Source: Octopus bimaculoides
Lineage: Eukaryota
NCBI RefSeq assembly: GCF_001194135.2
Contig: NC_068984.1
Span: forward strand, 73,535,438 to 73,569,334
Length of the DNA stretch: 33,897 nt
Direction: 5' to 3'
A model generated the notes under the pieces. It had not been told where the DNA came from, ran no database searches, and was given only the letters and a program-made list of their open reading frames with translations. Of this stretch, positions 1,198-32,112 are shown in pieces (the stretch's first letter is position 1; the number at the start of each line of letters is the position of its first letter). A program made the position numbers and the translations under genes.

Positions 1198-3190
1198 GAA
1201 CTGATCTTAGTACTGGATTGGCATTTAATTTATCAGCTCCAGATAAATGAAACACAAAGCATAGTATGGTAGGATTTGAACTCAAAATGCAAAGAGCTAG
1301 AATAAATACTCTAACGACTCTGCCATTTCATAACCAGAATCGGCTCACTGTACTTCTACCAATAATACAGCCAACACTGTCTCTCTCTAATCCCAAAGAT
1401 CAATTAAACATATTTCTTCTGTTTCTGTCGACTGTATACTATATTTCCCAAACTCAGTATCAGGTACTTATTTTTACAAGTCTTTCTACTACAAAACTTA
1501 AAATCCCTTGAACATTCTACTAGCTCAATTTTTCCACTTATGGTATCAGCCTTCAGAAGTTTAAACATGTATTGTAACAACACCACCAATCTAAGAAGAT
1601 ATGTAATACAACAGAGCATTGTTCACCTCTTCCTTAGCTTATCTAATAAGACAAAAATGGAAAAGCATACATGTCTTCTGGTTTTGTATCTAAAAGAAAG
1701 ATAAGAAATGAAAAATCCAAGATTGTACTTGTATTGGTGTTTACTCTCTAGGATTAGCAGGAAATGAGATTGAATTAAATACTATTATGAGTAAGTACCA
1801 TCGATTTGAACATGATCCAACAATGGACTCTGTAAATGGGCATTTGACCAGCTGAAAATAGCAACAAAATCTCCTTTAATCATATTTTGCCATCTTCAAA
1901 AGGAAAAAAAATGTACTGATTAATGTAGTTTTAGATACACTACATTGAAAATATAATGTGAGAAAGTCATTGCTGGAATACTTTTCAACATAGACCTGCT
2001 CAATCAATGCTAATCTCATGCTAAACAACAAATGCTACCCACCGATCCACCACAAAGCCTCTACACAGCCATCAGCAAGCAACAATTAGCAACCAAATCT
2101 ATTTCAGAATGTGACTTCTATTTATATAAAAGGTAAAAATATATCTAGATCTACAAGATCGTAGCTAGCCATGGTTACAAAACAATAGCAAAATGTTTGA
2201 TCTACTATGTTATGATAAAAGTTGAGATAGAATCCAGTTTGAAATTTATATGTACAAGTCATTACCAGTTGCTATGCTACCAGGTAATGGACCTAGCCAA
2301 GATGAAATAGAATCCTTCAGCAGAAGCTTACTACAATGATCGTAACAATTTGTTTGTTATGATCATTGAAACAAATTTTAATTCTATCTTGTACATGCTC
2401 TTGCTCTTTTTCACTGTATTTCTCTCTCAACAACAACAACTGCCTGTAATTGTAGTGAATCTTCTTTTAAAGCTAGTGTTGCTTGTCTATGTTGAAAAAC
2501 ATACAAAAACACAGACACACAACCAAAAGCAACATGTATAATATGCGCATATATAGTTATTTTTTTGTTTGTTTTTGAAGTCTATGCTGCATTGTGTTGA
2601 CAGACTTGCACTTAAAAGTTTCTCATTTTTAATCAAAACTTGTTAGTTACTATGGTGACAATACTACCAATCTATCTCTCTATTATCTTTCTCTCTCTCC
2701 TCCTCCTCCTCCTCCCTCTCTGTCTCTCTTTCCCTCTCTGTATTTCTATCCGAACAACAACTTCTCTTCCCCTTCTTCTAAGTATATGTTGTAATAGGAG
2801 TTATTTCCCCTTTTGATTCCTTCTCTTCTTCTCTCCCTATAATAGATGATGAGACAGACAGACATACAGACAGGTGGAGATCAGCTTCTCTTTTAAAATA
2901 TAAGATTCCAAAAACAAGAAAACCCATAGACACTTTAATCATTAATCAATACGAGGTCTAGCTAATTGAGCTGCAACCATGTCTTCATTTTCTCACCACA
3001 TGAAACATCAGCCAACCCAAAGAATGACAGGACTGAACTGTTTTGGGCTTTTGTCAAAAAGAGTGAGATTCACGGTAAGATAAGCTCATAAGTTATTAGT
3101 CAGACAAGGGTCCGGTAATTGATATCTTGCCACTGAGACCACATTGTGTGACCAGACTAAATGCATTACAAAACTTGCATTCTCTAAAGG

Positions 3191-4488: not shown

Positions 4489-4646
4489 ACGGCGGGATAT
4501 TCTCATCTTTTTTAGACATCCATGGTAAACTTCTTCAAGTGTTAAAACTAAGTCTCGCTCAATTGGGGGATCTTTTTTCTTTTGACTTCGGCCATGTAAT
4601 CCACCAAAACTCAGGCTCAAATCGCCATCAACTCTATCAAAGAATT
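4489..4646 (-). CDS. DNAJB13: DNAJB13 coding exon 4 ([53 protein letters not shown]); gene continues beyond position 1
   Basis: Acceptor ttccttatag, donor gtgagt; [20 protein letters not shown] start of the type II Hsp40 C-terminal domain; 158 nt. I found no next exon in 1-4488. Confidence 0.95.
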
Positions 4647-4822: not shown

Positions 4823-5546
4823 NNNNNNNNNNNNNNNNNNNNNNNNNNNNNNNNNNNNNNNNNNNNNNNNNNNNNNNNNNNNNNNNNNNNNNNNNNNNNN
4901 NNNNNNNNNNNNNNNNNNNNNNNNNNNNNNNNNNNNNNNNNNNNNNNNNNNNNNNNNNNNNNNNNNNNNNNNNNNNNNNNNNNNNNNNNNNNNNNNNNNN
5001 NNNNNNNNNNNNNNNNNNNNNNNNNNNNNNNNNNNNNNNNNNNNNNNNNNNNNNNNNNNNNNNNNNNNNNNNNNNNNNNNNNNNNNNNNNNNNNNNNNNN
5101 NNNNNNNNNNNNNNNNNNNNNNNNNNNNNNNNNNNNNNNNNNNNNNNNNNNNNNNNNNNNNNNNNNNNNNNNNNNNNNNNNNNNNNNNNNNNNNNNNNNN
5201 NNNNNNNNNNNNNNNNNNNNNNNNNNNNNNNNNNNNNNNNNNNNNNNNNNNNNNNNNNNNNNNNNNNNNNNNNNNNNNNNNNNNNNNNNNNNNNNNNNNN
5301 NNNNNNNNNNNNNNNNNNNNNNNNNNNNNNNNNNNNNNNNNNNNNNNNNNNNNNNNNNNNNNNNNNNNNNNNNNNNNNNNNNNNNNNNNNNNNNNNNNNN
5401 NNNNNNNNNNNNNNNNNNNNNNNNNNNNNNNNNNNNNNNNNNNNNNNNNNNNNNNNNNNNNNNNNNNNNNNNNNNNNNNNNNNNNNNNNNNNNNNNNNNN
5501 NNNNNNNNNNNNNNNNNNNNNNNNNNNNNNNNNNNNNNNNNNNNNN
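4823..5546. other. Assembly gap (further gaps at 15681-15774 and 29438-29959)
   Basis: Runs of N; the largest is flanked by (TA)n on both sides. Confidence 1.
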
Positions 5547-5929: not shown

Positions 5930-6275
5930 ATACCTGTGTGGGTCTCATGGAGGTGATGACAAGTGATCGAGACCTTTGACAATTAATTGTGCTTGAGAAG
6001 ACTCATCAAGCCAACTGAAGTGAAATTGTAGTTGTGGCTGGCGTCAGTGACATGTAAAAGCACCTGTTCTGGTGACATGTAATAACATCCGTGCTAGTGA
6101 CATATGAAAGGCAACCACTACACTCTTGGAGTGGTTGCTGTTAGGAAGAACATCAAGCCATAGAAACCAAGCCAAAATCAAACTGGAGCCTGGTACAACT
6201 CTCCAGCTTACCAGTTTCAACCAAACTGTCTAACCCATCGCAGCATGGAAAGCTGATGCTAAATGATGATGATAT
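5930..6275 (+). mobile_element. RTE 3' UTR/tail family copy (other copies 9700-9925 +, 24755-24950 -, 26700-26790 +, 29200-29437 -, 30085-30305 +)
   Basis: Shared GGCATTAGGAAGGGCATCCAGC..AACCCATGC(C/T)AGCATGGA..GATGATGAT sequence, also found at the end of the 18735 LINE; boundaries approximate. Confidence 0.7.
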
Positions 6276-10198: not shown

Positions 10199-10360
10199 CT
10201 TGAAATGGATTATCCATGCCAAAGAATTCTCTGAAAACCCTTTCTGCATCTCCATGAAATACATAGCCTTTAGTCCAGGGTTCTGGTTCGTTTCCTTTAG
10301 TAGGAATGCCATTTTTCAGCCCTTCTTCACCAAACTGGTCATATATAGCCTTGTGCTGCT
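10199..10360 (-). CDS. DNAJB13: DNAJB13 coding exon 3 ([54 protein letters not shown])
   Basis: Acceptor ttgtcttttcag, donor gtttga; [10 protein letters not shown] and the GYVFHG..VF.EFFG..NPF segment typical of DNAJB13; 162 nt, phase 1 to 1. Confidence 0.95.
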
Positions 10361-15443: not shown

Positions 15444-16108
15444 TTGCTGCACAAGACCAAAGCCTCCCCACCAGAAATTACCAAAAACATATAATGAAAA
15501 GAAACATAACAAGTAACTGTAGAATATGTGGAGATGGACAAGAAACAATAAATCATATTATCTCTGGCTGCCCAGTCCTGGCTAAGAAGGAATATATTCA
15601 CAGAAACGACAGAGCTGGGACCTATATACACTGGAAGCTATGCCAACATTATGGAATAGCAACAGAAAAAAGATGGTATANNNNNNNNNNNNNNNNNNNN
15701 NNNNNNNNNNNNNNNNNNNNNNNNNNNNNNNNNNNNNNNNNNNNNNNNNNNNNNNNNNNNNNNNNNNNNNNNNNAAATACAAAGACCTGGAAATAGAGGT
15801 AACTCGAATGTGGAATCTAAAAACAGAAACAATTCCTATCATACATAGTAGGTGCCTTAGGTACAATAAAAAAATATTCAGACAAATACATAACAAAAAC
15901 ACCAGGACTTACAAATATCTATAACATACAGAAAATTGCATTACTGGGCACTGCACACATCCTATGCAAAACACTTTCAATACAGTAACCATAAGAGCAC
16001 CACAGCAAACCACAGCACATACCCAAGGTGCACAGAGCTGCGCTCAGTAGTGAAGTGAAAGCACGTTATAAAAATAAAACTGCTGAACAAAAATAATAAT
16101 AATAATAA
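15444..16108 (+). mobile_element. R4/Dong-like (RLE-type) non-LTR retrotransposon 3' fragment, interrupted by a gap
   Basis: AAQDQSL.TR..CRICG..ETINHIISGCPVLA..Y..R (CCHC knuckle); KYKDL..EV.RMW..IPI..KIALLGTAHIL; (AAT)n tail. Confidence 0.85.
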
Positions 16109-16583
16109 TCCTTTCTACTATAGGCACACGGCCTGAAATTTGGCAGGGAGGGAACTTATCAATTACATTGACTCCCAGTGCTTGACAGGTACTTAATTTA
16201 TCGAGTCTGAAAGCATGAAAGGAAAAGTTGACCTCAGTGGAATTTAAACTCAGAACGTAAAGACAGACGAAATGCCACTAAGCATTTTGCCTGCCGTGCT
16301 AACGATTCTGCCAGCTCACCTCTTATTACTGCACTCAATAATAATAATAATTATAATAATAATTGGTGGAACAGTGGATCTCAAAGCACACATAAAGCTT
16401 GAAAGACTTTTTTTTTTGTTAGTGAGTAAGAGCAGTAGTAAATATTGGGTTGAAAACCGAAATTCATTTTGCATAGAAAAAGTTGAAGGCAGCCTTCAAC
16501 TTTTTCAGTTTGAAAAGGTTTTTCAACCTAATATTTACATCACATTATTTATAGCTTTATGTGTGTTCCAAGACCAGTTATTC

Positions 16584-16968
16584 TGTTGTTGGCACTCCGT
16601 CGCTTACGACGTCGAGGGTTCCAGTTGATCCGATCAACGGAACAACCTACTCGTGAAATTAACGTGCAAATGGCTGAGCACTCTACAGACACATGTACCC
16701 TTAATGTAGTTCTTGGGGATATTCAGCATGACACAGTGTGACAAGGCTGACCCTTTGAATTACAGGCACAACAGAAACAGGAAGTAAGAGTGAAAGAAAG
16801 TTGTGGTGAAAGAGTACAGCAAGGTTCACCACCATCCCCTGCCGGAGCCTCGTGGAGCTTTAGGTGTTTTTACTCAATAAACACTCACAACGCCCGGTCT
16901 GGAAATTGAAACCGCAATCCTATGACCACGAGTCCGCTGCCCTAACCACTGGGCCATCGCGCCTCCAC
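16584..16968 (-). mobile_element. Full-length tRNA-derived SINE, family A
   Basis: Reverse-complement match to 27470-27849 along its length. Confidence 0.85.
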
Positions 16969-17503: not shown

Positions 17504-17610
17504 TATTACTAAGGACTTCATAAGCCTCTGCGATTTGCATAAACATCTCTGCAGCCTTCAGACATTGATCAGTTTTGTCAGGATGGTACAACAGAGCCAG
17601 TTTCCGATAA
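17504..17610 (-). CDS. DNAJB13: DNAJB13 coding exon 2 ([36 protein letters not shown])
   Basis: Acceptor ttccatgcag, donor gtaaga; HPD motif and AYEVLS helix of the J-domain; 107 nt, phase 2 to phase 1. Confidence 0.95.
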
Positions 17611-18734: not shown

Positions 18735-19740
18735 TAGATAGCTTCCGTTATCTAGGTGACCAAGTTAATAGCGGAAGTGGATGCTCCAAGAGCGTAGCTG
18801 TGAGAATAAGATTAGGCAGGGGAATGTTCAGAGAGCTCCTGCCTCTGCTGGCAACAAAGGCCTCTCCCTCAGAGTGAAAGGCAGACTGAATGATGCCTGT
18901 GTATGAACAGCTATGCTACACAGCAGTAAAACAGGGGCTGTGGCAGCAAAGGACATGTGTAGGCTTGAAAGAAATGAAACCACTATACTTCACTGGATGT
19001 GCAATGTCAGTGTGCATGTTCAACAGAGTGTAAGCACCTTGAGAGAGAAAGTTGGGCACAAGAGGCATCAGATGTGGTGTGCAAGAGAGAGGACTGTGCT
19101 GGTATGGTCATATGTTGCATATGGACGAGGACAGCTGTGTAAAGATGTGCCGATCTCTAACTGTGGTAGAGGTAGACCCAGGAAGATATGGGAGGAGATG
19201 GTAAAGCATGATCTTCGAACTTTGGGCCTCACAAAGGCAATGATCTGTGACTGAGACCTTTGGTGATACGTTGTGCTTGAGAAGACCCATCAAGCCAAGT
19301 GAAATCATAGTCATGGCTGATGCTGGTATCACGTAACTAGTACTTGTTCCGGTGACACATAAAAAGCACCTTTCAAGCGTTGGGCCTCATAGAGACAAAG
19401 TGGCTGACACACGTGAAAAGCTGCTTTTGAGTGTTGGGCTTCATGGAGGCAATGACCAAGACCTTTGGCATTATGTCATGCTTGAGAAAAAGACCCATCA
19501 AGCCAAGTAAAATCACAGTCGTGGCAGATACCAGTGTCATGCAAATGGCACCCATGCTGGTGGCACATAAAAGCACCTGTTACACTCTCAGAGTGGTTGG
19601 CATTAGAAGGGCATTCAGCTGTAGAAACCATGTCAAATAAGACTGGAGTCTGGTGAAGCCTTCCAGCTTGGCAGCTCTGGTCAAAACCGTCCAACCCATG
19701 CCAGCATGGACAACAGAATCTTGATGACAATAATGATGAG
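18735..19740 (+). mobile_element. RTE-clade LINE 3' fragment with 3' UTR and (GAT)n-like tail
   Basis: SFRYLGD..RIRL..FRELLPLL..LSLRVKGRL..RLERNE..L.WMCNV..GRGRPRKIW motifs with stops and frameshifts. Confidence 0.85.
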
Positions 19741-20208
19741 ATATATTGTTATGGCTATTTCGTGTGACGCCATTTGCACTTCAAAAATATATTTGCAATG
19801 ATATAAACCCCTTTGAATATTAATGTATCAATCTTTTTTCTTCTTTGTGTTGTAAACCATTTGCCATTTTTGAGGTGCCCTAAGCACGTGTTTATTATAG
19901 GCAGAGGTAAAGAATATGCACACCACCCGTTTTCGGCGTTTTTTATTTATTTTTTCCAAAAATTTCTTCGGATGTTCAATATACAATTTAAGTCCTGGTC
20001 ACAAAAACAACAAAAAAAAAACACAGCTTACTAGTTGTAATAAATGTGTAGAAAACGAATATGAAAACAAAAATTTGCGCAAATGAATGCGGTGGGTGGG
20101 GAAATGACTTTCTGAAAATTCACAAGATCCGATTTTTCCCTCATAACTTTCAGGAAAATGGATATATATTGTTGAAATTTTATAGAAATACCGTTCAAAT
20201 AGCACAAA

Positions 20209-21695: not shown

Positions 21696-21939
21696 GCGCG
21701 CAAACGCACAATATTTCTATCACATATACAGCTTTCACTATGGGACATGCTTTCCGTTATCAGCCCAGACGTAGATCACAATAATTTCATCACTTTGCAA
21801 TTTATTTTTTTTCTAACGTTCTATCATTGCTACAACACTCGTTAATCTTATTCAAAAGGAATATTAAATAATACAATGTAATTTATGCCTCTATGTCAGC
21901 AACTGCATACGATTCGACATTACAATTGAACTAACTTGC

Positions 21940-22007
21940 CTTTTCTTTATCTCAGCATCTGTTGCACTCCTGGTAATATTTAGTATGTCATAGTAATCGA
22001 CTCCCAT
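21940..22007 (-). CDS. DNAJB13: DnaJ homolog subfamily B member 13, coding exon 1 (MGVDYYDILNITRSATDAEIKK-), GC donor
   Basis: ATG at 22007-22005; J-domain N-terminus DYYDIL..EIKK; 68 nt, phase 2, donor AAG|GCAAGT; joins in frame to exon 2. Confidence 0.92.
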
Positions 22008-22090
22008 GTTAATTTGATGAGTAAATTGGATTAAGGTGTAGTGAAAAAGAGAGAAGAGGAAAAAATATTACTATAACATTTTATATGTAC

Positions 22091-22098
22091 GTAAACAA
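22091..22098 (+). promoter_or_regulatory. Forkhead (FOXJ1-type) motif GTAAACAA next to the X-box
   Basis: RTAAACA core 17 bp from the X-box; short motif with high chance of random occurrence in AT-rich DNA. Confidence 0.45.
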
Positions 22099-22114
22099 TA
22101 ACTTGCTAGTGACT

Positions 22115-22128
22115 GTTGCCATAGTAAT
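22115..22128. promoter_or_regulatory. RFX X-box (GTTGCCATAGTAAT)
   Basis: Matches GTNRCC-N0-3-RGYAAC except the last base; 108-121 bp upstream of the DNAJB13 ATG. Confidence 0.65.
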
Positions 22129-23178
22129 TTTAGAGCTAGCCACATAACTGATAGTTACGCATTATGTAAGTCGTATTATAATCGATACATACATGTGTGT
22201 GGGGGGGGGGGTACATAACTGATTTCGAGAATTTCTCCTAATAGTTTTATAGAAGCTGAATTATTTCTTCGTTTACTTTAGTGTTAGAACCAATTAATTT
22301 TCCAGCTTTTTCTACAACCGGTTTGAAAAAAGTTAAAGTTTGTCTGCTGTGAGAAATACTAAAAACTAGCCCCCTTTTTTTTTTCAAATTTATTTCAGTG
22401 CTATCTTATATAAATAAATTCATTAAAAAAAATAGAAAGACTATTTTATATTTACAATCAGGGAATCTATGATACGCGCGGATTTTACATATCGGCTTGT
22501 TTTTCCGTAATAAAAACAATTTTAGTTATTTTTTCTATATATATTTTTTTATTAATTCTACCTCACCAACCTTTAGATATAAAATATGACTGACACAGTT
22601 TTAAAATATACACTAAGAAATACTATATTCTTTATAATTCGTTTTCTTTTATTCATTTCTATCTCTCCAATGTGTGTGCGTTATTGTTTGTTTTTATGTT
22701 CAATTATAATAAAAAACAATTTTACATTAATCTGATAGGTTTCTTTATACTTTTGTAGAGCAAAATTTTATCATTCTTTAACAAGAATTTTGTTGTCAGT
22801 AACTTCGAAGTGTCGGCCGTCAATGGACTGGCTGCCCTACGACGGCTTAACTGGCTGATACTTCGAAGTCACTATCAACAACATTCGTGTTTAAGAATAA
22901 CGTGCGCGCACAGACACACAGATAGATAGATAGATAGAAGTCGAGGTCAACTTTGCCTTTAAATTATTCCATCGGGTCGTAAAAATAGTACCTGTTATGT
23001 ACTGGCATACATTTTATATTTCTATAAAACGTCCAGGGTGTGAATGGTAGGGTTATATAGCAGAAGACTGAGACGAAAAATAATTTTTGGTCGAGATACA
23101 TATACGAAACTAATTGAATGAATAGACGAATATCTCGCAACCGTAAACCACTCAGCGAAGTTTGAAAACATTCAATGT

Positions 23179-23185
23179 TGTTTAC
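23179..23185 (-). promoter_or_regulatory. Forkhead motif TGTTTAC just upstream of the CFAP47 ATG
   Basis: Reverse complement of GTAAACA, 25 bp before the ATG (could be in the 5' UTR). Confidence 0.35.
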
Positions 23186-23209
23186 TTGTCAACGCGGATT
23201 GTGTACAAA

Positions 23210-23353
23210 ATGGCCAAGACCGACGGTAAAGTCATATCAATTCACCCACCGTATATTAGTTTCATAAGCGATAGGTGGCACGAAGAAAACGTCCTAGTTA
23301 CCAATGTCAGCAATAACTTAAGAACAATCGAGTTACATCCACCGAAATCAGAC
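23210..23353 (+). CDS. CFAP47: Cilia- and flagella-associated protein 47, putative first coding exon (MAKTDGKVISIHPPYISFISDRWHEENVLVTNVSNNLRTIELHPPKSD)
   Basis: ATG in aaaATGG context, donor gac|gtaagt, phase 0; resembles the start of the first ASH/Ig-like repeat of CFAP47 and joins in frame to exon 2. Confidence 0.8.
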
Positions 23354-23528: not shown

Positions 23529-23771
23529 GGTACTACTAAAGCAGCACGGTCCCGAACGCGCAGTCGCGCGTCCGCGCTAGCTAGTCGTGAGTGGTCGATC
23601 CTAACCCTAACCCTAAACACGTATTCATTTGCACACGCGGGTTAGGGATAGGGTTAGGGTTAGGGACAGGGCTAGGGTTAGGGTTAGGGTTAGGGTTAGG
23701 ATCGACCACTCAAGACTAGCTAGCGCGGACGCGCGACTGCGCGTTCGGGACCGTGCTGTTTTAGTAGTACC
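23529..23771. mobile_element. Young foldback MITE (Merlin-like) with 88-bp TIRs and internal TTAGGG repeats
   Basis: Arms 23529-23616 and 23684-23771 are reverse complements with 2 mismatches; GGTAC termini; 9-bp TSD GATATATTT/GATATATGT. Confidence 0.85.
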
Positions 23772-25980
23772 GATATATGTGGGGTCCTTGAAGAAATGAA
23801 AGTCAACAAATGCAGCAAGGAAGAAAATGAGAAGGGGAAGGGAAATCTCAAATTTCGACGTTCTATGAAGAAAAGACTGGGCATGTGGTGTAAGTGGGGG
23901 GGGGGGGCATAGGATAGGAAGAGAGTTAACTCATAAGGCATAATGGAAAGGAGCTTAGTGGTAGGCACAATATAGATGATGAGAAGAGGAGCGGATGGAC
24001 GCACGGATAACAAGAGGAGAGAAGAACCTGTCAAGTGGACCAGGGTGGTGGCGGCATGTCACTAGTCACCTGCCAACAACCAAGTCCATTGTAGTTATGT
24101 TCTTATGCAAAGCGACTTAAGGATGGCGTAGCACATCTGTCGGTGATTGTAGTGCATAGATGCTGTGCATCATGTGGCCATGGTAAGGCATCGCCTTGAC
24201 GAAATTTTAGTCGGGTGAATCGAATCCAGTACTTCTGCTTTTATTTTAAGCCTGTCATTTATTCTATCAGTCTGTTTTGACGAACTGCTAAGTTACGAGG
24301 GTCGTGGGGGAGACACTGACAAACAGGCGCACACATACACACACGCATATATACGGTGGGTTTCTTTCTCTTTCTGTTCACTAATACAAGCACATACACG
24401 CATGTATACCAGATCCACTCACAACGCTTTGGTCAGCCCGAAGCTTTAGTAAAAGAGACATGCCCAAGGTGCTATGCAGGGAGACTGAACCTGGAACCAT
24501 GCAGTTGAGAAGCAAATTTCTTACCAAGCAGCCTTACCTGCACCTGCTGTTGATAATGTTTTCCTCACTGCAGATAAACTATTCAACTTTCTATGAACTC
24601 TTTTTTCCATAAATTATTGCTGGTGTAGATACTTATCAGCCTCCTTGGATTCCAGACTCTAACAAGTTTAATTTAAGGTTGTTTCTTCCTTAAGATCTAA
24701 GCTTTCAGAGGATTGAAAGGTTTATGATGCATCTTTAAGATAGAGACTTGAAGTATCATCATCATCATCGTCGTCGTTTAACTTCCGCTTTCCATGCTAG
24801 CATGGGTTGGACGATTTGACAGGGAACTAGTGAACCAGATGGCTACACCAGGCTCCAATCTGATTTGACAGTGTTTCTACAGCTGGATGCCCTTCCTAAT
24901 GCCAACCACTCCGAGAGTGTAGTGGGTGCTTTTACGTGCCACCGGCACAAAGCTTTTATTTTATTTTGTTTCATTTAATTTTTTCATTGCTTAGTCACAT
25001 GAAGAAGACCAGTACATATAACCATTTGTTAGAGTTTCCAAGGGTCGTGGGTGGAAGAGAAGGTATCCTCAGACTGAAAACCGGACTCAAATGCTTACAA
25101 CAGAGTAATGTATTTATCAGGGCTGTGGAGTCGAAACAAAAAACTATGACTCCGACTTGTCTACTCTTGGCACCTCTAACTCCTTTATGTAATTAAGTGA
25201 TTGTAGTCCATTTTACCGATTCCTACTCCACAGCCCTGTTATTTATTCGATGATGAATTAAGTCCCCTAGCTAAAGTGAAATGAAAGTCTCAACCAGAAT
25301 GTGAAACACGAGACATTAACTTTACACATTACTCTGAGCAAGAGACTGATAGAACAAGAATCAGACTTCAAAAAGATTTTTTCCAACTAAACCCTTCAAG
25401 GTTGAGTGAGCTCCAGTATGGCTGCTGTCCAATGACTGAAATAAGTAAAAGATAAGTTCCTAAAGATAGTTATCTTAATGGATTGGTCTGATAGTGGGGA
25501 AGTGGGGAGTAGTTGTGCTCATGATGGTCTTCACAAGCCCTTTGATACCTGTTAGGTCAGCTGATGTAACTGATGTTCTTCAACAACTGCCCACTTATTG
25601 TTGCGGGCTGTCTTCACCAATATTTAAAACTGTTTGTTAAGTAAAGTGTAAGACCACTTCAGAAGTACACACACACACACACACATATATGAAGTAACTT
25701 TACATTAAGGAGTGGAACTTGCAATTTTCTATAAGTCAGACTGCCTCATGGCCCCAGCAGACAAAATGGAAAAGGTTTTACCCAGGAGGATGGCTAGGGA
25801 GATGCACTGGAACAGCCACTCTGACTCACACTTGCAGACAACTATCTCTTCCCCAACAGTGGTGAGCAGGGAAAAGACTTAAGAAGATGAAGGAAACTCT
25901 AGAGGGAGGACATTCTTAGGAAGAAGTATTGGATAAAGTTGATAGTTTAGGCTTCCACCTCCTCATTTTCCCCCTCCTCC

Positions 25981-26221: not shown

Positions 26222-26379
26222 GAATTTGAAATAAAATCCAAAATCTCGGAGAAAGTCCTAGCTGCAGGTTTGACTGTGAATATACCAGTTATATACAGGG
26301 GTACATTTGATGGGTACTCTTTGCAGGACAGATTGACTATTTGCAGTGGAGAACACAGAGTCGAAGTTCCACTCTTTGT
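26222..26379 (+). CDS. CFAP47: CFAP47 exon 2 (EFEIKSKISEKVLAAGLTVNIPVIYRGTFDGYSLQDRLTICSGEHRVEVPLF-)
   Basis: Acceptor caacatacag, donor gtaagc; LAAGL..DRL..EVPL matches recalled CFAP47 LASGL..DRL..EIPL; 158 nt, ends in phase 2. Confidence 0.9.
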
Positions 26380-27031: not shown

Positions 27032-27239
27032 GTCTTCTCCATGCTGTATCTTGTCTGTTAGTGGAGAAGTAGACTTTGGCTGCATGGTGGCCAACAATGA
27101 GGTGAACACAAGGTCTTTCGAAATTAGAAATGAAGGCCTTATCCCAGGAGAGTTCAAGGTCAAGTATTCTGGAAACACACCTTTGTTAATGAGCCCAAAA
27201 GAAGGGGTTGTGCCTGCACTATCAGCCTGGTTGATTACT
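27032..27239 (+). CDS. CFAP47: CFAP47 exon 3 (V-SSPCCILSVSGEVDFGCMVANNEVNTRSFEIRNEGLIPGEFKVKYSGNTPLLMSPKEGVVPALSAWLIT)
   Basis: Polypyrimidine tract plus cag, donor gtaagt; VDFG.MVAN..N.G..PG.F matches recalled CFAP47; 208 nt. Confidence 0.93.
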
Positions 27240-27469: not shown

Positions 27470-27849
27470 GAGGCGCAATAGCCCAGTGGTTAGGGCAGGA
27501 TCATAGGATCGTGGTTTCGATTCCCAGACCGGGCGTTTTGAGTGTTTATTGAGCGAAAACACCTAAAGCTCCACGAAGCTCCGGCAGGGGATGGTGGCGA
27601 ACCCTGCTGTACTCTTCCACCACAACTTTCTCTCACTCTTACTTCCTGTTTCTGTTGTGCCTGTAATTCAAAGGGCCAGCCTTGTCACACTGTGTCACGC
27701 TGAATCTCCCCCGGGAACTACGTTAAGGGTACACGTTTCTGTGGAGTGCTCAGCCACTTGCACGTTAATTTCACGAGCAGGCTGTTCCGTTGATCGAATC
27801 AACTGGAACCCTCCGCGTCGTAAGCGACAGAGTGCCAACAACAACAACA
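27470..27849 (+). mobile_element. Full-length tRNA-derived SINE, family A
   Basis: A box TAGCCCAGTGG, B box GTTTCGATTCC, (CAA)n tail; near-identical inverted copy at 16584-16968. Confidence 0.85.
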
Positions 27850-28649
27850 GTCAAACACTAGAGAGTTGCTCATGTCTTTGACTAAACGAACTAAGGAATC
27901 CTTTCGACCAAATGATTTCTCCTCATTTGCCAAGCATTGGGCTCTATGTATCTGGTGCATTTTACTGTTGCACCAATTAAATAAGTTGCTTTGCACCCTC
28001 CAGGACAGAAAAGAATCCTCAATATTCTATGTTGTCTACATTTGGTCCGGAAAACATAAATGGTAGTGAGGGTAGAAGAGAGGGCAATTGTAGATGAAGT
28101 ATATTAAGAGTGAGAAGGAAAAGATAGTTTGACAGAGGAGGAACAATGATAATGTGGAAGAAGAGGGTAAATAAAGAGAGACAGTTTGATAGGAACAATA
28201 AGGGAGGCTGTAATGATAGCTATATGTTTGCAAGTTAAAGGAGAGTGAGTGATAGTCACAGAAATTGTTTAGTGTTGAGAAAGAAAGTGTGATGGATGTT
28301 CATGATCTGGTAATAATGGAGTTGGAGTAGCAGTCTGGAGGGATGTGATAATGCTAGCTGAAGAGAGAGAGAGAGAGAGAGCACAGATGATAAGTAGTTG
28401 AGATGATGGTGGCAAGAAAGTACTGAATGTCAATGAAAGAGTGACCTAAGTTAGAGGGGGAGGGGGAGAGCAGGATAGGGAGAAGGTAAACAGAGTTATA
28501 CACTGGCTATCAAATGATTCAATGAAATTCCACACTACTCAACCATCATAGTAAAAGAGAAACAGTAGCAGTGGTAGACACATGAGACATATGCCTGCTA
28601 GCTTAGAGAGAAAGAGAGAAATGAAGTTATGTGTGTGTTATCATTGTCA

Positions 28650-29150: not shown

Positions 29151-29965
29151 TTAATAGCTCCCTTAACTTTTTCTACATACTTATGTGTTAGTATATATAT
29201 ATCATCATCATCATCATCATCGTTTAACGTCCGCTTTCCATGCTAGCATGGGTTGGACGATTTGACTGAGGACTGGTGAAACCGGATGGCAACACCAGGC
29301 TCCAGTCTGATTTGGCAGAGTTTCTACAGCTGGATGCCCTTCCTAACGCCAACCACTCAGAGAGTGTAGTGGGTGCTTTTACGTGTCACCCGCACGAAAA
29401 CGGCCACGCTCGAAATGGTGTCTTTTATGTGCCACCCNNNNNNNNNNNNNNNNNNNNNNNNNNNNNNNNNNNNNNNNNNNNNNNNNNNNNNNNNNNNNNN
29501 NNNNNNNNNNNNNNNNNNNNNNNNNNNNNNNNNNNNNNNNNNNNNNNNNNNNNNNNNNNNNNNNNNNNNNNNNNNNNNNNNNNNNNNNNNNNNNNNNNNN
29601 NNNNNNNNNNNNNNNNNNNNNNNNNNNNNNNNNNNNNNNNNNNNNNNNNNNNNNNNNNNNNNNNNNNNNNNNNNNNNNNNNNNNNNNNNNNNNNNNNNNN
29701 NNNNNNNNNNNNNNNNNNNNNNNNNNNNNNNNNNNNNNNNNNNNNNNNNNNNNNNNNNNNNNNNNNNNNNNNNNNNNNNNNNNNNNNNNNNNNNNNNNNN
29801 NNNNNNNNNNNNNNNNNNNNNNNNNNNNNNNNNNNNNNNNNNNNNNNNNNNNNNNNNNNNNNNNNNNNNNNNNNNNNNNNNNNNNNNNNNNNNNNNNNNN
29901 NNNNNNNNNNNNNNNNNNNNNNNNNNNNNNNNNNNNNNNNNNNNNNNNNNNNNNNNNNATATATA

Positions 29966-31883: not shown

Positions 31884-32112
31884 AGTGAAACTTGAAAACA
31901 GTGAAACACGTCATGTAATCATATCAGGTCGTGTGATATACCAAGAATTGGAACTCTTGGACCCAGAAACAGAGAAAATTACTGAAAAGATTCAGTTTGG
32001 TTACTGCTATTATGGCTGTGATTTAATCCAGTTTGCCACTTTGTACAACAATAGTCCAATTCCTGCAAAGTTTGTTGCTGTTGTTGATGAAAAGGCAGAT
32101 GGGGAAGAAGTT
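31884..32112 (+). CDS. CFAP47: CFAP47 exon 5 (VKLENSETRHVIISGRVIYQELELLDPETEKITEKIQFGYCYYGCDLIQFATLYNNSPIPAKFVAVVDEKADGEEV); gene continues past window end
   Basis: Long T-rich tract plus tag, donor gtgagt; I.FG...YNNSP.P..VA....A.GEE matches recalled CFAP47; 229 nt. Confidence 0.95.

What the first reader, a model, noticed from the sequence alone, without database searches (positions are those of the whole stretch)
21940..23353. Head-to-head pair of motile-axoneme genes (DNAJB13 / CFAP47) sharing a 1.2-kb spacer with an RFX X-box and forkhead sites
Seen: divergent ATGs at 22007 (-) and 23210 (+), GTTGCCATAGTAAT at 22115, GTAAACAA at 22091 and TGTTTAC at 23179. Established: DNAJB13 is a radial-spoke Hsp40 (RSP16 orthologue), CFAP47 is an axonemal protein linked to sperm flagellar defects, and RFX plus FOXJ1 drive motile-cilia genes. 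Inference: one bidirectional RFX/FOXJ1 promoter co-regulates both genes in sperm or ciliated epithelia. As I recall, the two genes are unlinked in human, so this could be a lineage-specific or ancestral ciliary gene pairing.
Basis: partly seen in the sequence, partly recalled or inferred. Interest (0 to 1): 0.7.

Follow-up and report, generated by a model that had tools for sequence, protein, structure and literature searches.

The report
Ancient head-to-head DNAJB13/CFAP47 cilia gene pair

Summary
The window is Octopus bimaculoides chromosome CM046604.1. Every stated coordinate and motif is correct. The minus-strand gene is DNAJB13 and the plus-strand gene is CFAP47, with start codons 1,202 bp apart.

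The same head-to-head pair occurs in Argonauta, Mytilus, the annelid Ridgeia, Lingula, the sea star Asterias and the acorn worm Ptychodera. Outside the octopods the spacers are 350-667 bp. The pair therefore predates the protostome/deuterostome split. It is absent in a ray, amphioxus, a land snail and two cnidarians.

In the window alone the X-box and forkhead motifs are no more than chance. Across species the X-box is not chance: 7 of 12 animals carry a strong one within 200 bp upstream of the DNAJB13 ATG (P about 4e-12), whoever the neighbour is.

So the X-box at 22115 belongs to the DNAJB13 core promoter. CFAP47 has its own conserved proximal block, although its RFX half-site is degenerate in O. 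bimaculoides. In Argonauta a retrotransposon stretches the spacer to 9.9 kb, so the two promoters can be separated. The forkhead sites are not supported statistically. Transcription starts and co-expression remain untested.

This is a new, apparently unreported member of a known kind.

The parts
21940..22007 (-). DNAJB13 exon 1: ATG at 22007, 22 codons plus 2 nt, GC-AG intron donor GCAAGT
   Evidence: The translation is 100% identical to residues 1-22 of the annotated O. bimaculoides DNAJB13 (P0121). Ser23 is split AG|T across the intron.
17504..17610 (-). DNAJB13 exon 2, the rest of the J domain including the HPD motif
   Evidence: tblastn of P0121 against the window, plus the splice context. 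Pfam DnaJ 7e-24.
10199..10360 (-). DNAJB13 exon 3
   Evidence: tblastn of P0121 and the splice context.
4489..4646 (-). DNAJB13 exon 4 (3' boundary approximate). The C-terminal half of the gene lies beyond the window start.
   Evidence: tblastn of P0121 residues 113-166 at 100% identity. The annotated gene spans 39 kb.
22008..23209 (.). 1,202-bp spacer between the two start codons, 31% G+C, no assembly gaps
   Evidence: Exact reverse-complement match to L003:8799-10000 of GCA_001194135.2.
22115..22128 (-). X-box of the DNAJB13 proximal promoter. It reads ATTACTATGGCAAC in the DNAJB13 sense: a perfect RFX monomer site GTTGCC plus a weaker second half, 108-121 nt upstream of the ATG.
   Evidence: It scores 13.7 bits, the top site in the spacer. 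Argonauta has GTTTCTATGGCAAC at -96 with the shared flank GCTAGCT. Seven of 12 animals have a site of 12 bits or more in -200..-1, P 4e-12. Consensus taken from PMC10530576 and PMC2375033.
22091..22098 (+). Forkhead-type motif GTAAACAA (TGTTTAC in the DNAJB13 sense), 17 nt downstream of the X-box
   Evidence: Present. Not kept in position or orientation in Argonauta. Cross-species enrichment is weak: RYAAAYA P 0.04, GTAAACA core P 0.16.
22079..22085 (-). TATAAAA on the DNAJB13 strand, 72-78 nt upstream of the ATG. Possible TATA box, by inference only.
   Evidence: Read directly from the sequence. No transcript data.
22773..22898 (.). 126-nt hairpin-forming inverted repeat in the middle of the spacer. 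Probably an inserted MITE-like element that lengthens the spacer.
   Evidence: Arms of 46 nt, 83% complementary. Folding energy -55.9 kcal/mol, z -7.8. No Rfam match. No counterpart found in Argonauta by blastn.
23103..23209 (+). CFAP47-proximal block conserved between Octopus and Argonauta: putative CFAP47 core promoter and 5' UTR
   Evidence: A blastn HSP of 75% identity over 218 bp covers this block plus exon 1. See also the sequence comparison.
23134..23142 (+). Degenerate RFX half-site CTCGCAACC. Argonauta has CTAGCAACC, which fits RGCAAC.
   Evidence: RGCAAC in the CFAP47 sense lies within 200 bp of the CFAP47 ATG in 5 of 7 species (P 3e-5), but O. bimaculoides itself misses the consensus by one base.
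23179..23193 (+). TGTTTAC (23179-23185) overlapping an X-box-like GTTTACTTGTCAAC (23180-23193), 17-31 nt upstream of the CFAP47 ATG
   Evidence: Both are conserved in Argonauta, which has GTTTACTTGACAAC. The X-box score is only 6.6-7.8 bits.
23210..23353 (+). CFAP47 exon 1: 48 codons, phase 0, donor GTAAGT
   Evidence: It is the annotated CDS start. The N-terminus is homologous to exon 1 of Mytilus, Asterias, Ridgeia, Lingula and Ptychodera, M..D..GVRI.PP..F.
26222..26379 (+). CFAP47 exon 2, the rest of the first Ig-like domain
   Evidence: Weak tblastn hits of CFAP47 homologues at residues about 51-103. Splice sites and phases fit exons 1 and 3.
27032..27239 (+). CFAP47 exon 3 (VDFG... Ig-like domain)
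   Evidence: Match to PDB CFAP47 9ijj, tblastn, sequence.
31884..32112 (+). A later CFAP47 exon with approximate boundaries. One small exon between 27240 and 31883 was not located.
   Evidence: The reading phases of the flanking exons do not join directly.

Best explanation
The locus is an ancient divergent pair of motile-cilium genes: DNAJB13, the radial-spoke Hsp40, and CFAP47, a central-apparatus protein. The pair was already head to head in the last common ancestor of protostomes and deuterostomes.

The ancestral state was a compact intergenic region of 350-670 bp. It carried two RFX sites, one close to each gene, each with its strong half-site RGCAAC pointing at its own gene. GCCATnTT-type elements often accompany them.

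It most likely recruits an RFX dimer just upstream of the DNAJB13 transcription start, which I infer lies about 50-100 nt upstream of the ATG.

CFAP47 is driven mainly from its own conserved block of about 107 bp next to its ATG. The octopod spacer has been stretched by insertions: a hairpin element in Octopus and an LTR retrotransposon in Argonauta.

Co-expression in sperm and ciliated cells would then come from both promoters answering to the same RFX (and possibly FOXJ1) programme, not from one shared element.

Shown: the gene identities, the synteny and the motif conservation. Inferred: RFX binding, the positions of the transcription starts, and the independence of the two promoters.
For: Identity:
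- DNAJB13 scores 1e-50 against 2e-25 for DNAJB1.
- CFAP47 scores 1.4e-17 and Chlamydomonas FAP47 3e-10, against HYDIN at 2e-6.
- The annotated neighbour is 3,105 aa with Pfam CFAP47, Ig_CFAP47 and CH.

Synteny:
- CFAP47 lies head to head with DNAJB13 in Octopus at 1,202 bp and in two Mytilus assemblies at 350 bp.
- The same holds in Ridgeia at 525 bp, Lingula at 536 bp, Asterias at 442 bp and Ptychodera at 667 bp.
- In Argonauta the spacer is about 9.9 kb.

DNAJB13 X-box:
- Seven of 12 species have a site of 12 bits or more within 200 bp of the ATG, against 0.0093 expected. Binomial P is 4e-12.
- This includes species whose neighbour is MDN1, TFIIE-alpha or nothing annotated.

CFAP47 side:
- RGCAAC in the CFAP47 sense is within 200 bp of its ATG in 5 of 7 species, P 3e-5.
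- CYGCCATnnTGTT is present in 4 of 7 species and absent from all background sequence of those loci outside the two promoter-proximal zones.

Separability:
- The Argonauta spacer contains gag and pol (RVT_1, RNase H, integrase).
- Both proximal regions still keep their motifs there.

Literature:
- RFX motifs are concentrated within +/-100 bp of the starts of motile-cilia genes from cnidarians to human. Forkhead motifs at promoters are poorly conserved and may be dispensable (PMC5245798).
Against: - No transcript, CAGE or chromatin data were available, so transcription starts are inferred from ATGs.
- In O. bimaculoides itself the CFAP47-side half-site is degenerate (CGCAAC). The only strong X-box in the spacer is the DNAJB13-side one, so CFAP47 could depend on it over 1.1 kb.
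- The X-box matrix was written from my own knowledge of the consensus. The thresholds and the GCCATnTT and CYGCCAT patterns were chosen after seeing the data.
- Only 12 species were sampled.
- Lingula, Mytilus and Ptychodera have only half-sites upstream of DNAJB13.
- The DNAJB13 upstream regions of the two octopods do not align by BLAST beyond 7 bp. Conservation there is at motif level only.
Confidence: 0.7

Rival explanations
1. A single bidirectional RFX/FOXJ1 promoter drives both genes in octopus: the X-box at 22115, with the flanking forkhead sites, controls DNAJB13 and CFAP47 together.
For: - It is the only strong X-box in the 1.2-kb spacer.
- The O. bimaculoides CFAP47-side half-site misses the consensus.
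- Head-to-head order with short spacers has been kept in five phyla, as expected if the regulatory DNA cannot be split.
- RFX2 can bridge distant sites and stabilise FOXJ1 (PMC5245798).
Against: - The X-box is about 1.08 kb from the CFAP47 ATG.
- The same X-box position is conserved upstream of DNAJB13 where CFAP47 is not the neighbour.
- Other bilaterians have two X-boxes, one per gene.
- Argonauta tolerates a retrotransposon and 9.9 kb between the genes.
- Forkhead motifs are at chance level.
Confidence: 0.17
2. The adjacency has no regulatory meaning. The pair persists only because a break inside a short intergenic region would damage one promoter or the other. The octopus X-box and forkhead matches are chance matches in AT-rich DNA.
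For: - In the window alone the motif counts are at chance level.
- The pair has been lost without obvious harm in chordates, a land snail and possibly cnidarians.
Against: - X-box enrichment upstream of DNAJB13 across 12 species has P 4e-12.
- The Octopus and Argonauta sites share their flanks.
- Both genes belong to the motile-axoneme gene set, whose promoters are typically RFX-bound (PMC5245798).
Confidence: 0.08

Closest known systems
RFX (X-box) promoters of ciliary genes: DAF-19 in C. elegans, dRfx in Drosophila, RFX2/RFX3 in vertebrates, cRFXa in choanoflagellates
   Same: There is a palindromic GTNRCC N0-3 RGYAAC-type site, with a perfect GTTRCY monomer half, about 100 nt upstream of the ATG of a motile-cilium gene. 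Its position is conserved across species. That conservation is the criterion Laurencon et al. found predictive (PMC2375033; PMC10530576; PMC5245798).
   Different: The second half-site is imperfect in O. bimaculoides (ATTACT instead of GTNRCC). No binding or expression data exist for cephalopods. I found no paper naming DNAJB13 together with an X-box.
Bidirectional (divergent) promoters and conserved head-to-head gene pairs or microsynteny in metazoans (from my own knowledge: Trinklein 2004, Li 2006, Irimia 2012)
   Same: Two functionally related genes are transcribed divergently from a short intergenic region. Their order and orientation are kept across phyla.
   Different: The usual definition needs transcription starts less than 1 kb apart. 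In Octopus the ATGs are 1,202 bp apart and in Argonauta about 9.9 kb, so in octopods this may be two neighbouring promoters. Each gene has its own X-box in most species. I found no report of this particular pair.
RFX-forkhead cooperation at motile-cilia genes: Rfx2-Foxj1 in Xenopus, Rfx-Fd3F in Drosophila
   Same: An X-box has a forkhead-type motif 17 nt away at the DNAJB13 promoter. Loosely similar pairs occur in Asterias, Ridgeia and Lingula.
   Different: Forkhead motifs are not enriched beyond background here. The published Xenopus data show that FOXJ1 is often held at promoters by RFX2 without its own motif. The forkhead matches therefore add little.

Membership tests
DNAJB13 / RSP16 (radial-spoke type II Hsp40) | N-terminal J domain with the HPD motif | tested here: met
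   Pfam DnaJ 7.4e-24 over residues 4-67. YHPDK is encoded in exon 2.
DNAJB13 / RSP16 (radial-spoke type II Hsp40) | Closer to DNAJB13 than to other DNAJB paralogues | tested here: met
   DNAJB13 chains score 1e-50 to 3e-50. RSP16 scores 2e-26 and DNAJB1 2e-25. The window exons are 100% identical to the NCBI-named O. bimaculoides DNAJB13.
DNAJB13 / RSP16 (radial-spoke type II Hsp40) | C-terminal DnaJ_C substrate-binding domains | tested here: met
   These lie outside the window. The annotated 316-aa product carries PF01556.
CFAP47 / FAP47 (central-apparatus protein) | Pfam CFAP47 and Ig_CFAP47 domains plus a CH domain in a protein of about 3,000 aa | tested here: met
   The annotated 3,105-aa product has PF24529, PF26579 and PF00307 (weak). 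Only the first 180 or so residues lie in the window.
CFAP47 / FAP47 (central-apparatus protein) | N-terminal Ig-like repeats best matched by CFAP47 rather than HYDIN, CFAP65 or CFAP74 | tested here: met
   CFAP47 (9ijj) scores 1.4e-17 and FAP47 3e-10, against HYDIN at 2e-6. The Pfam hits of the fragment itself are below threshold.
RFX X-box | Match to GTNRCC N0-3 RGYAAC, or at least the monomer GTTRCY | tested here: met
   The monomer GTTGCC is perfect. The full palindrome has 1 mismatch. It fits the degenerate RYYNYY N1-3 RRNRAC and misses GYTRYY N1-3 RRHRAC by one base (consensus).
RFX X-box | Conserved in orthologous promoters at a similar distance from the ATG | tested here: met
   Sites lie at -64 to -137 in 7 of 12 species at 12 bits or more, P 4e-12.
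RFX X-box | Bound by an RFX protein, with expression that depends on RFX | not testable with these tools
Bidirectional promoter | Divergent transcription starts less than about 1 kb apart | tested here: inconclusive
   The ATG-to-ATG distance is 1,202 bp in Octopus and about 9.9 kb in Argonauta, with transcription starts unknown. It is 350-667 bp in Mytilus, Ridgeia, Lingula, Asterias and Ptychodera, where the criterion is very likely met.
Bidirectional promoter | Shared cis-element needed for both directions, and correlated expression | not testable with these tools
   This needs reporter or expression data.
FOXJ1 / forkhead site | RYAAAYA core present and enriched or conserved at the promoter | tested here: not met
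   The motifs are present but at chance level. In the window there are 10 against 7.25 expected. Across species RYAAAYA gives P 0.04 and the GTAAACA core P 0.16. Only TGTTTAC at 23179 is kept in Argonauta, inside a block that is conserved as a whole.

The most novel reading that the evidence does not exclude
The divergent DNAJB13-CFAP47 pair is an ancestral bilaterian cis-regulatory unit. Under this reading it is a compact dual-X-box intergenic region with GCCATnTT-type elements, held together in at least five phyla because the two RFX-bound promoters work as one regulatory module. It was then broken up in chordates and loosened in octopods. That would make it one of the few motile-cilia gene pairs with a traceable promoter grammar across Bilateria, and a natural system for asking whether RFX sites act directionally.
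Probability: 0.35. Interest if true: 0.6.

Novelty: new member of a known kind. Interest (0 to 1): 0.45.

Why it matters
Both genes cause human motile-cilia and sperm-flagellum disease. Their regulation is assumed to be RFX/FOXJ1-driven, but it is rarely traced outside model organisms.

The pair gives a concrete, deeply conserved piece of ciliary promoter architecture. It consists of two short promoters, each with an oriented RFX half-site, and it can be compared across phyla.

It also offers natural experiments. The spacer is 350 bp in a mussel, 1.2 kb in Octopus and 9.9 kb with a retrotransposon in Argonauta, and the pair is broken up in chordates. These cases can test whether neighbouring RFX promoters are coupled.

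For genome annotation, the result confirms both octopus gene starts. It also shows that a motif match in one AT-rich sequence is not evidence on its own.

Tried and rejected
1. The first homologue search, with the 182-aa CFAP47 fragment, found nothing. All hits in the later searches were no longer than 1.75 times the query length. I therefore infer a length limit in that tool rather than an absence of homologues. PDB and the exhaustive HMMER search did find CFAP47 relatives.

2. Enrichment of the X-box and forkhead motifs inside the window is not significant.

3. A BLAST alignment of the DNAJB13 upstream regions of Octopus and Argonauta reaches only 7 bp beyond the ATG. The X-box had to be compared as a motif.

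4. I looked for a strong CFAP47-side X-box in O. bimaculoides. There is only a degenerate half-site (CGCAAC) and a 6.6-bit X-box-like site.

5. An Rfam scan of the whole window found no RNA family, so the spacer hairpin is not a known RNA.

6. Literature searches for the pair, for DNAJB13 with X-box, and for CFAP47 with synteny found nothing on the arrangement.

7. I considered that the conserved AACAWYATGGCRG upstream of CFAP47 might be the true start codon or a conserved upstream ORF. The short ORFs differ in length and sequence between species, so this is left open.

8. One small CFAP47 exon between 27240 and 31883 could not be located.
Full report
**Origin and observation**

The 1,202-bp spacer is an exact reverse-complement match to Octopus bimaculoides assembly GCA_001194135.2, chromosome CM046604.1, near 73.5 Mb.
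- The minus-strand ATG is at 22007 and the plus-strand ATG at 23210.
- GTTGCCATAGTAAT lies at 22115-22128, GTAAACAA at 22091 and TGTTTAC at 23179.
- The finding's end points, 21940 and 23353, are the true ends of the two first coding exons.

**Gene identities**

I joined the minus-strand exons in the window: 22007-21940, 17610-17504, 10360-10199 and 4646 to about 4489.
- They carry a J domain (Pfam DnaJ 7e-24).
- They match solved DNAJB13 chains at 1e-50. Chlamydomonas RSP16 scores 2e-26 and DNAJB1 2e-25.
- They are 100% identical to the NCBI-named O. bimaculoides DNAJB13, P0121.
- The C-terminal half lies beyond the window, since the gene spans 39 kb.

The plus-strand exons match mammalian CFAP47 (9ijj) at 1.4e-17 and Chlamydomonas FAP47 at 3e-10. 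HYDIN scores only 2e-6.
- The annotated product that starts at this ATG is 3,105 aa with Pfam CFAP47, Ig_CFAP47 and CH.
- The exon chain 23210-23353, 26222-26379 and 27032-27239 is consistent in reading phase.
- The N-terminus, MAKTDGKVISIHPP..F, is homologous to the first exon of CFAP47 in Mytilus, Ridgeia, Lingula, Asterias and Ptychodera.
- The start codon at 23210 is therefore sound.

**Chance in the window alone**

X-box-like matches with up to 1 mismatch number 4 against 2.0 expected. TGTTTAC occurs 10 times against 7.25 expected. On this evidence alone the regulatory reading would be weak. Laurencon et al. reached the same conclusion for Drosophila: an X-box upstream of one gene is not predictive, but a conserved one is.

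**Microsynteny**

I took DNAJB13 orthologues and read their genomic neighbourhoods.

A gene with the Pfam CFAP47 domain lies head to head with DNAJB13 in:
- two Mytilus assemblies, at 350 bp;
- Lingula, at 536 bp;
- Asterias, at 442 bp;
- Ptychodera, at 667 bp.

In the annelid Ridgeia the upstream divergent gene, at 525 bp, contains CFAP47-homologous exons. In Argonauta hians, CFAP47 exon 1 and 107 bp of its upstream DNA lie about 9.9 kb from the DNAJB13 ATG.

The pair was not found within 10 kb in:
- the land snail Candidula, where arginine kinase lies upstream;
- Branchiostoma;
- the ray Mobula, which has a mitochondrial-carrier gene downstream, as with UCP2 in human from my own knowledge;
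- the coral Pocillopora, where MDN1 is head to head at 187 bp;
- the jellyfish Rhopilema, where TFIIE-alpha is at 131 bp.

Human CFAP47 is X-linked, and DNAJB13 is autosomal from my own knowledge.

By parsimony the pair existed in the protostome-deuterostome ancestor and was lost in chordates and at least one gastropod. Whether it is older than Bilateria remains open. I found no paper describing it.

**The X-box**

I scanned with an approximate palindromic RFX matrix written from my own knowledge of the consensus. Background rates came from the same loci. The best sites within 200 bp upstream of the DNAJB13 ATG were:

| Species | Site | Position |
|---|---|---|
| Octopus | ATTACTATGGCAAC | -121 |
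| Argonauta | GTTTCTATGGCAAC | -96 |
| Candidula | GTTGCTACGGCGAC | -72 |
| Branchiostoma | CTCACCATAGCAAC | -137 |
| Mobula | GTTGCCGCAGCAAC | -88 |
| Pocillopora | GTTTCCAAGACAAC | -64 |
| Rhopilema | ATTACCGTGGCAAC | -93 |

- Ridgeia and Asterias have weaker sites. Mytilus, Lingula and Ptychodera have half-sites only.
- Seven of 12 species reach 12 bits, against 0.0093 expected per 200 bp. The binomial P is 4e-12.
- The site is present whether the neighbour is CFAP47, MDN1, TFIIE-alpha or nothing annotated.
- It is therefore a feature of the DNAJB13 core promoter. This fits the reported concentration of RFX motifs within +/-100 bp of the starts of motile-cilia genes from cnidarians to human.
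- Octopus and Argonauta share the flank GCTAGCT. Otherwise their DNAJB13 upstream regions do not align.

**The CFAP47 side**

In the CFAP47 sense, an RGCAAC half-site lies within 200 bp of the CFAP47 ATG in 5 of 7 pair-bearing species (P 3e-5).
- Ridgeia has a near-perfect GTTCCCCGGGCAAC.
- In Mytilus, Ridgeia, Asterias and Ptychodera the half-site is followed by a shared 13-mer. It reads CYGCCATnnTGTT on the DNAJB13-sense strand, and it is absent from all background sequence of those loci outside the two promoter-proximal zones.
- The compact ancestral spacer thus held two X-boxes, one per gene.

In octopods a 107-bp block next to the CFAP47 ATG (window 23103-23209) is conserved at 75% with exon 1.
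- It holds CTAGCAACC in Argonauta but CTCGCAACC, one base off the consensus, in O. bimaculoides.

**Forkhead motifs**

Across species RYAAAYA is barely enriched upstream of DNAJB13 (9 of 12 species against 0.61 expected per 200 bp, P 0.04). The GTAAACA core is not enriched (P 0.16). Published Xenopus data indicate that FOXJ1 is often held at promoters through RFX2 without a motif of its own. The forkhead matches are therefore neither evidence for nor evidence against FOXJ1 input.

**Spacer growth**

The Octopus spacer contains a G-run, a GATA microsatellite and a 126-nt hairpin-forming inverted repeat at 22773-22898 (z -7.8). Blastn found no counterpart of the hairpin in Argonauta, and Rfam has no match for it.

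The Argonauta spacer contains an LTR-retrotransposon gag and pol, with reverse transcriptase, RNase H and integrase. I identified that element only from its reading frames and did not extract its sequence.

Both insertions lie between the two conserved proximal regions. This argues that the two promoters can work apart.

**Conclusion**

The gene identities, the reality of the X-box and the 'ancestral pairing' option are supported.

The specific mechanism, one shared RFX/FOXJ1 bidirectional promoter, is not supported as the best reading. More likely there are two adjacent RFX-type promoters in an ancient divergent arrangement.

The shared-promoter model is not excluded for O. bimaculoides, because its CFAP47-side half-site is degenerate and no transcript or chromatin data were available.

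**Caveats**
- ATGs stand in for transcription starts.
- The matrix and several patterns were defined by me, some after seeing the data.
- The species sample is small, and neighbour calls depend on public annotations within 10-kb flanks.

Noticed in passing
window 23529-23771 (CFAP47 intron 1): A near-perfect inverted repeat: 88-nt arms, 98% complementary, 67 nt apart. The inner parts are telomere-type repeats, (CCCTAA)n facing (TTAGGG)n. It could be an interstitial telomeric palindrome, a foldback element or an assembly artefact.
   Followed up: partly
window 22773-22898 (spacer): A 126-nt hairpin-forming inverted repeat with folding energy -55.9 kcal/mol and z -7.8. It is single-copy in the window and has no Rfam match. 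Blastn found no counterpart in Argonauta. It looks MITE-like, and an unannotated small-RNA precursor cannot be excluded.
   Followed up: partly
window 21934-21939 (minus strand): DNAJB13 intron 1 uses a GC donor (GCAAGT), so it is a GC-AG intron. Ser23 is split AG|T across a 4.3-kb intron.
   Followed up: yes
window 2646-2659 (minus strand): A perfect match to the X-box consensus (GTCACCATAGTAAC) lies deep in DNAJB13 intron 4. It could be chance, since 2 near-matches are expected in the window, or an intronic RFX site.
   Followed up: no
L004:3989-7914 (Argonauta hians spacer): Intact-looking gag (DUF7041) and pol (RVT_1, RNase H, integrase) reading frames of an LTR retrotransposon lie between DNAJB13 and CFAP47. 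They account for most of the 9.9-kb spacer.
   Followed up: partly
L006:20167-24566, L010:19789-22822, L007:15371-24406, L011:22054-23225, L009:16201-25387; P0212: A gene with the TFIID-18kDa domain (TAF13- or SUPT3H-like) lies just downstream of DNAJB13 in Mytilus, Lingula, Branchiostoma, Ptychodera and the coral Pocillopora. It is fused to DNAJB13 in a Pomacea gene model. This second linkage may be older than the CFAP47 one.
   Followed up: no
L005:9705-9717, L002:9590-9602, L008:9651-9663, L011:9418-9430; DNAJB13-proximal sites in L005, L002, L010, L007, L009: GCCATnTT (YY1-like) elements accompany the X-boxes. CYGCCATnnTGTT sits next to CFAP47 in four phyla. GCCAT(C/A)TT lies 36-103 nt upstream of the DNAJB13 ATG in 5 of 12 species (P 5e-5, pattern chosen after seeing the data). 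All are on the same strand. Read in the CFAP47 sense they contain an ATG in a strong Kozak context that opens short, non-conserved ORFs.
   Followed up: partly
L001:11050-11546 (Candidula unifasciata, DNAJB13 intron 1): Six tandem copies, 91 bp apart, of a fragment resembling the start of DNAJB13 exon 2 (..YRKLSLKYHP) lie just upstream of the real exon 2.
   Followed up: no
window 6047-6229(-), 19479-19748(-), 24820-24975(+), 29270-29400(+); and 16552-16869(-) vs 27542-27878(+): There are several copies of at least two interspersed repeat families in the introns of both genes. They were recognised from shared reading-frame translations. There are also three assembly gaps, at 4823-5546, 15681-15774 and 29438-29958.
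   Followed up: no
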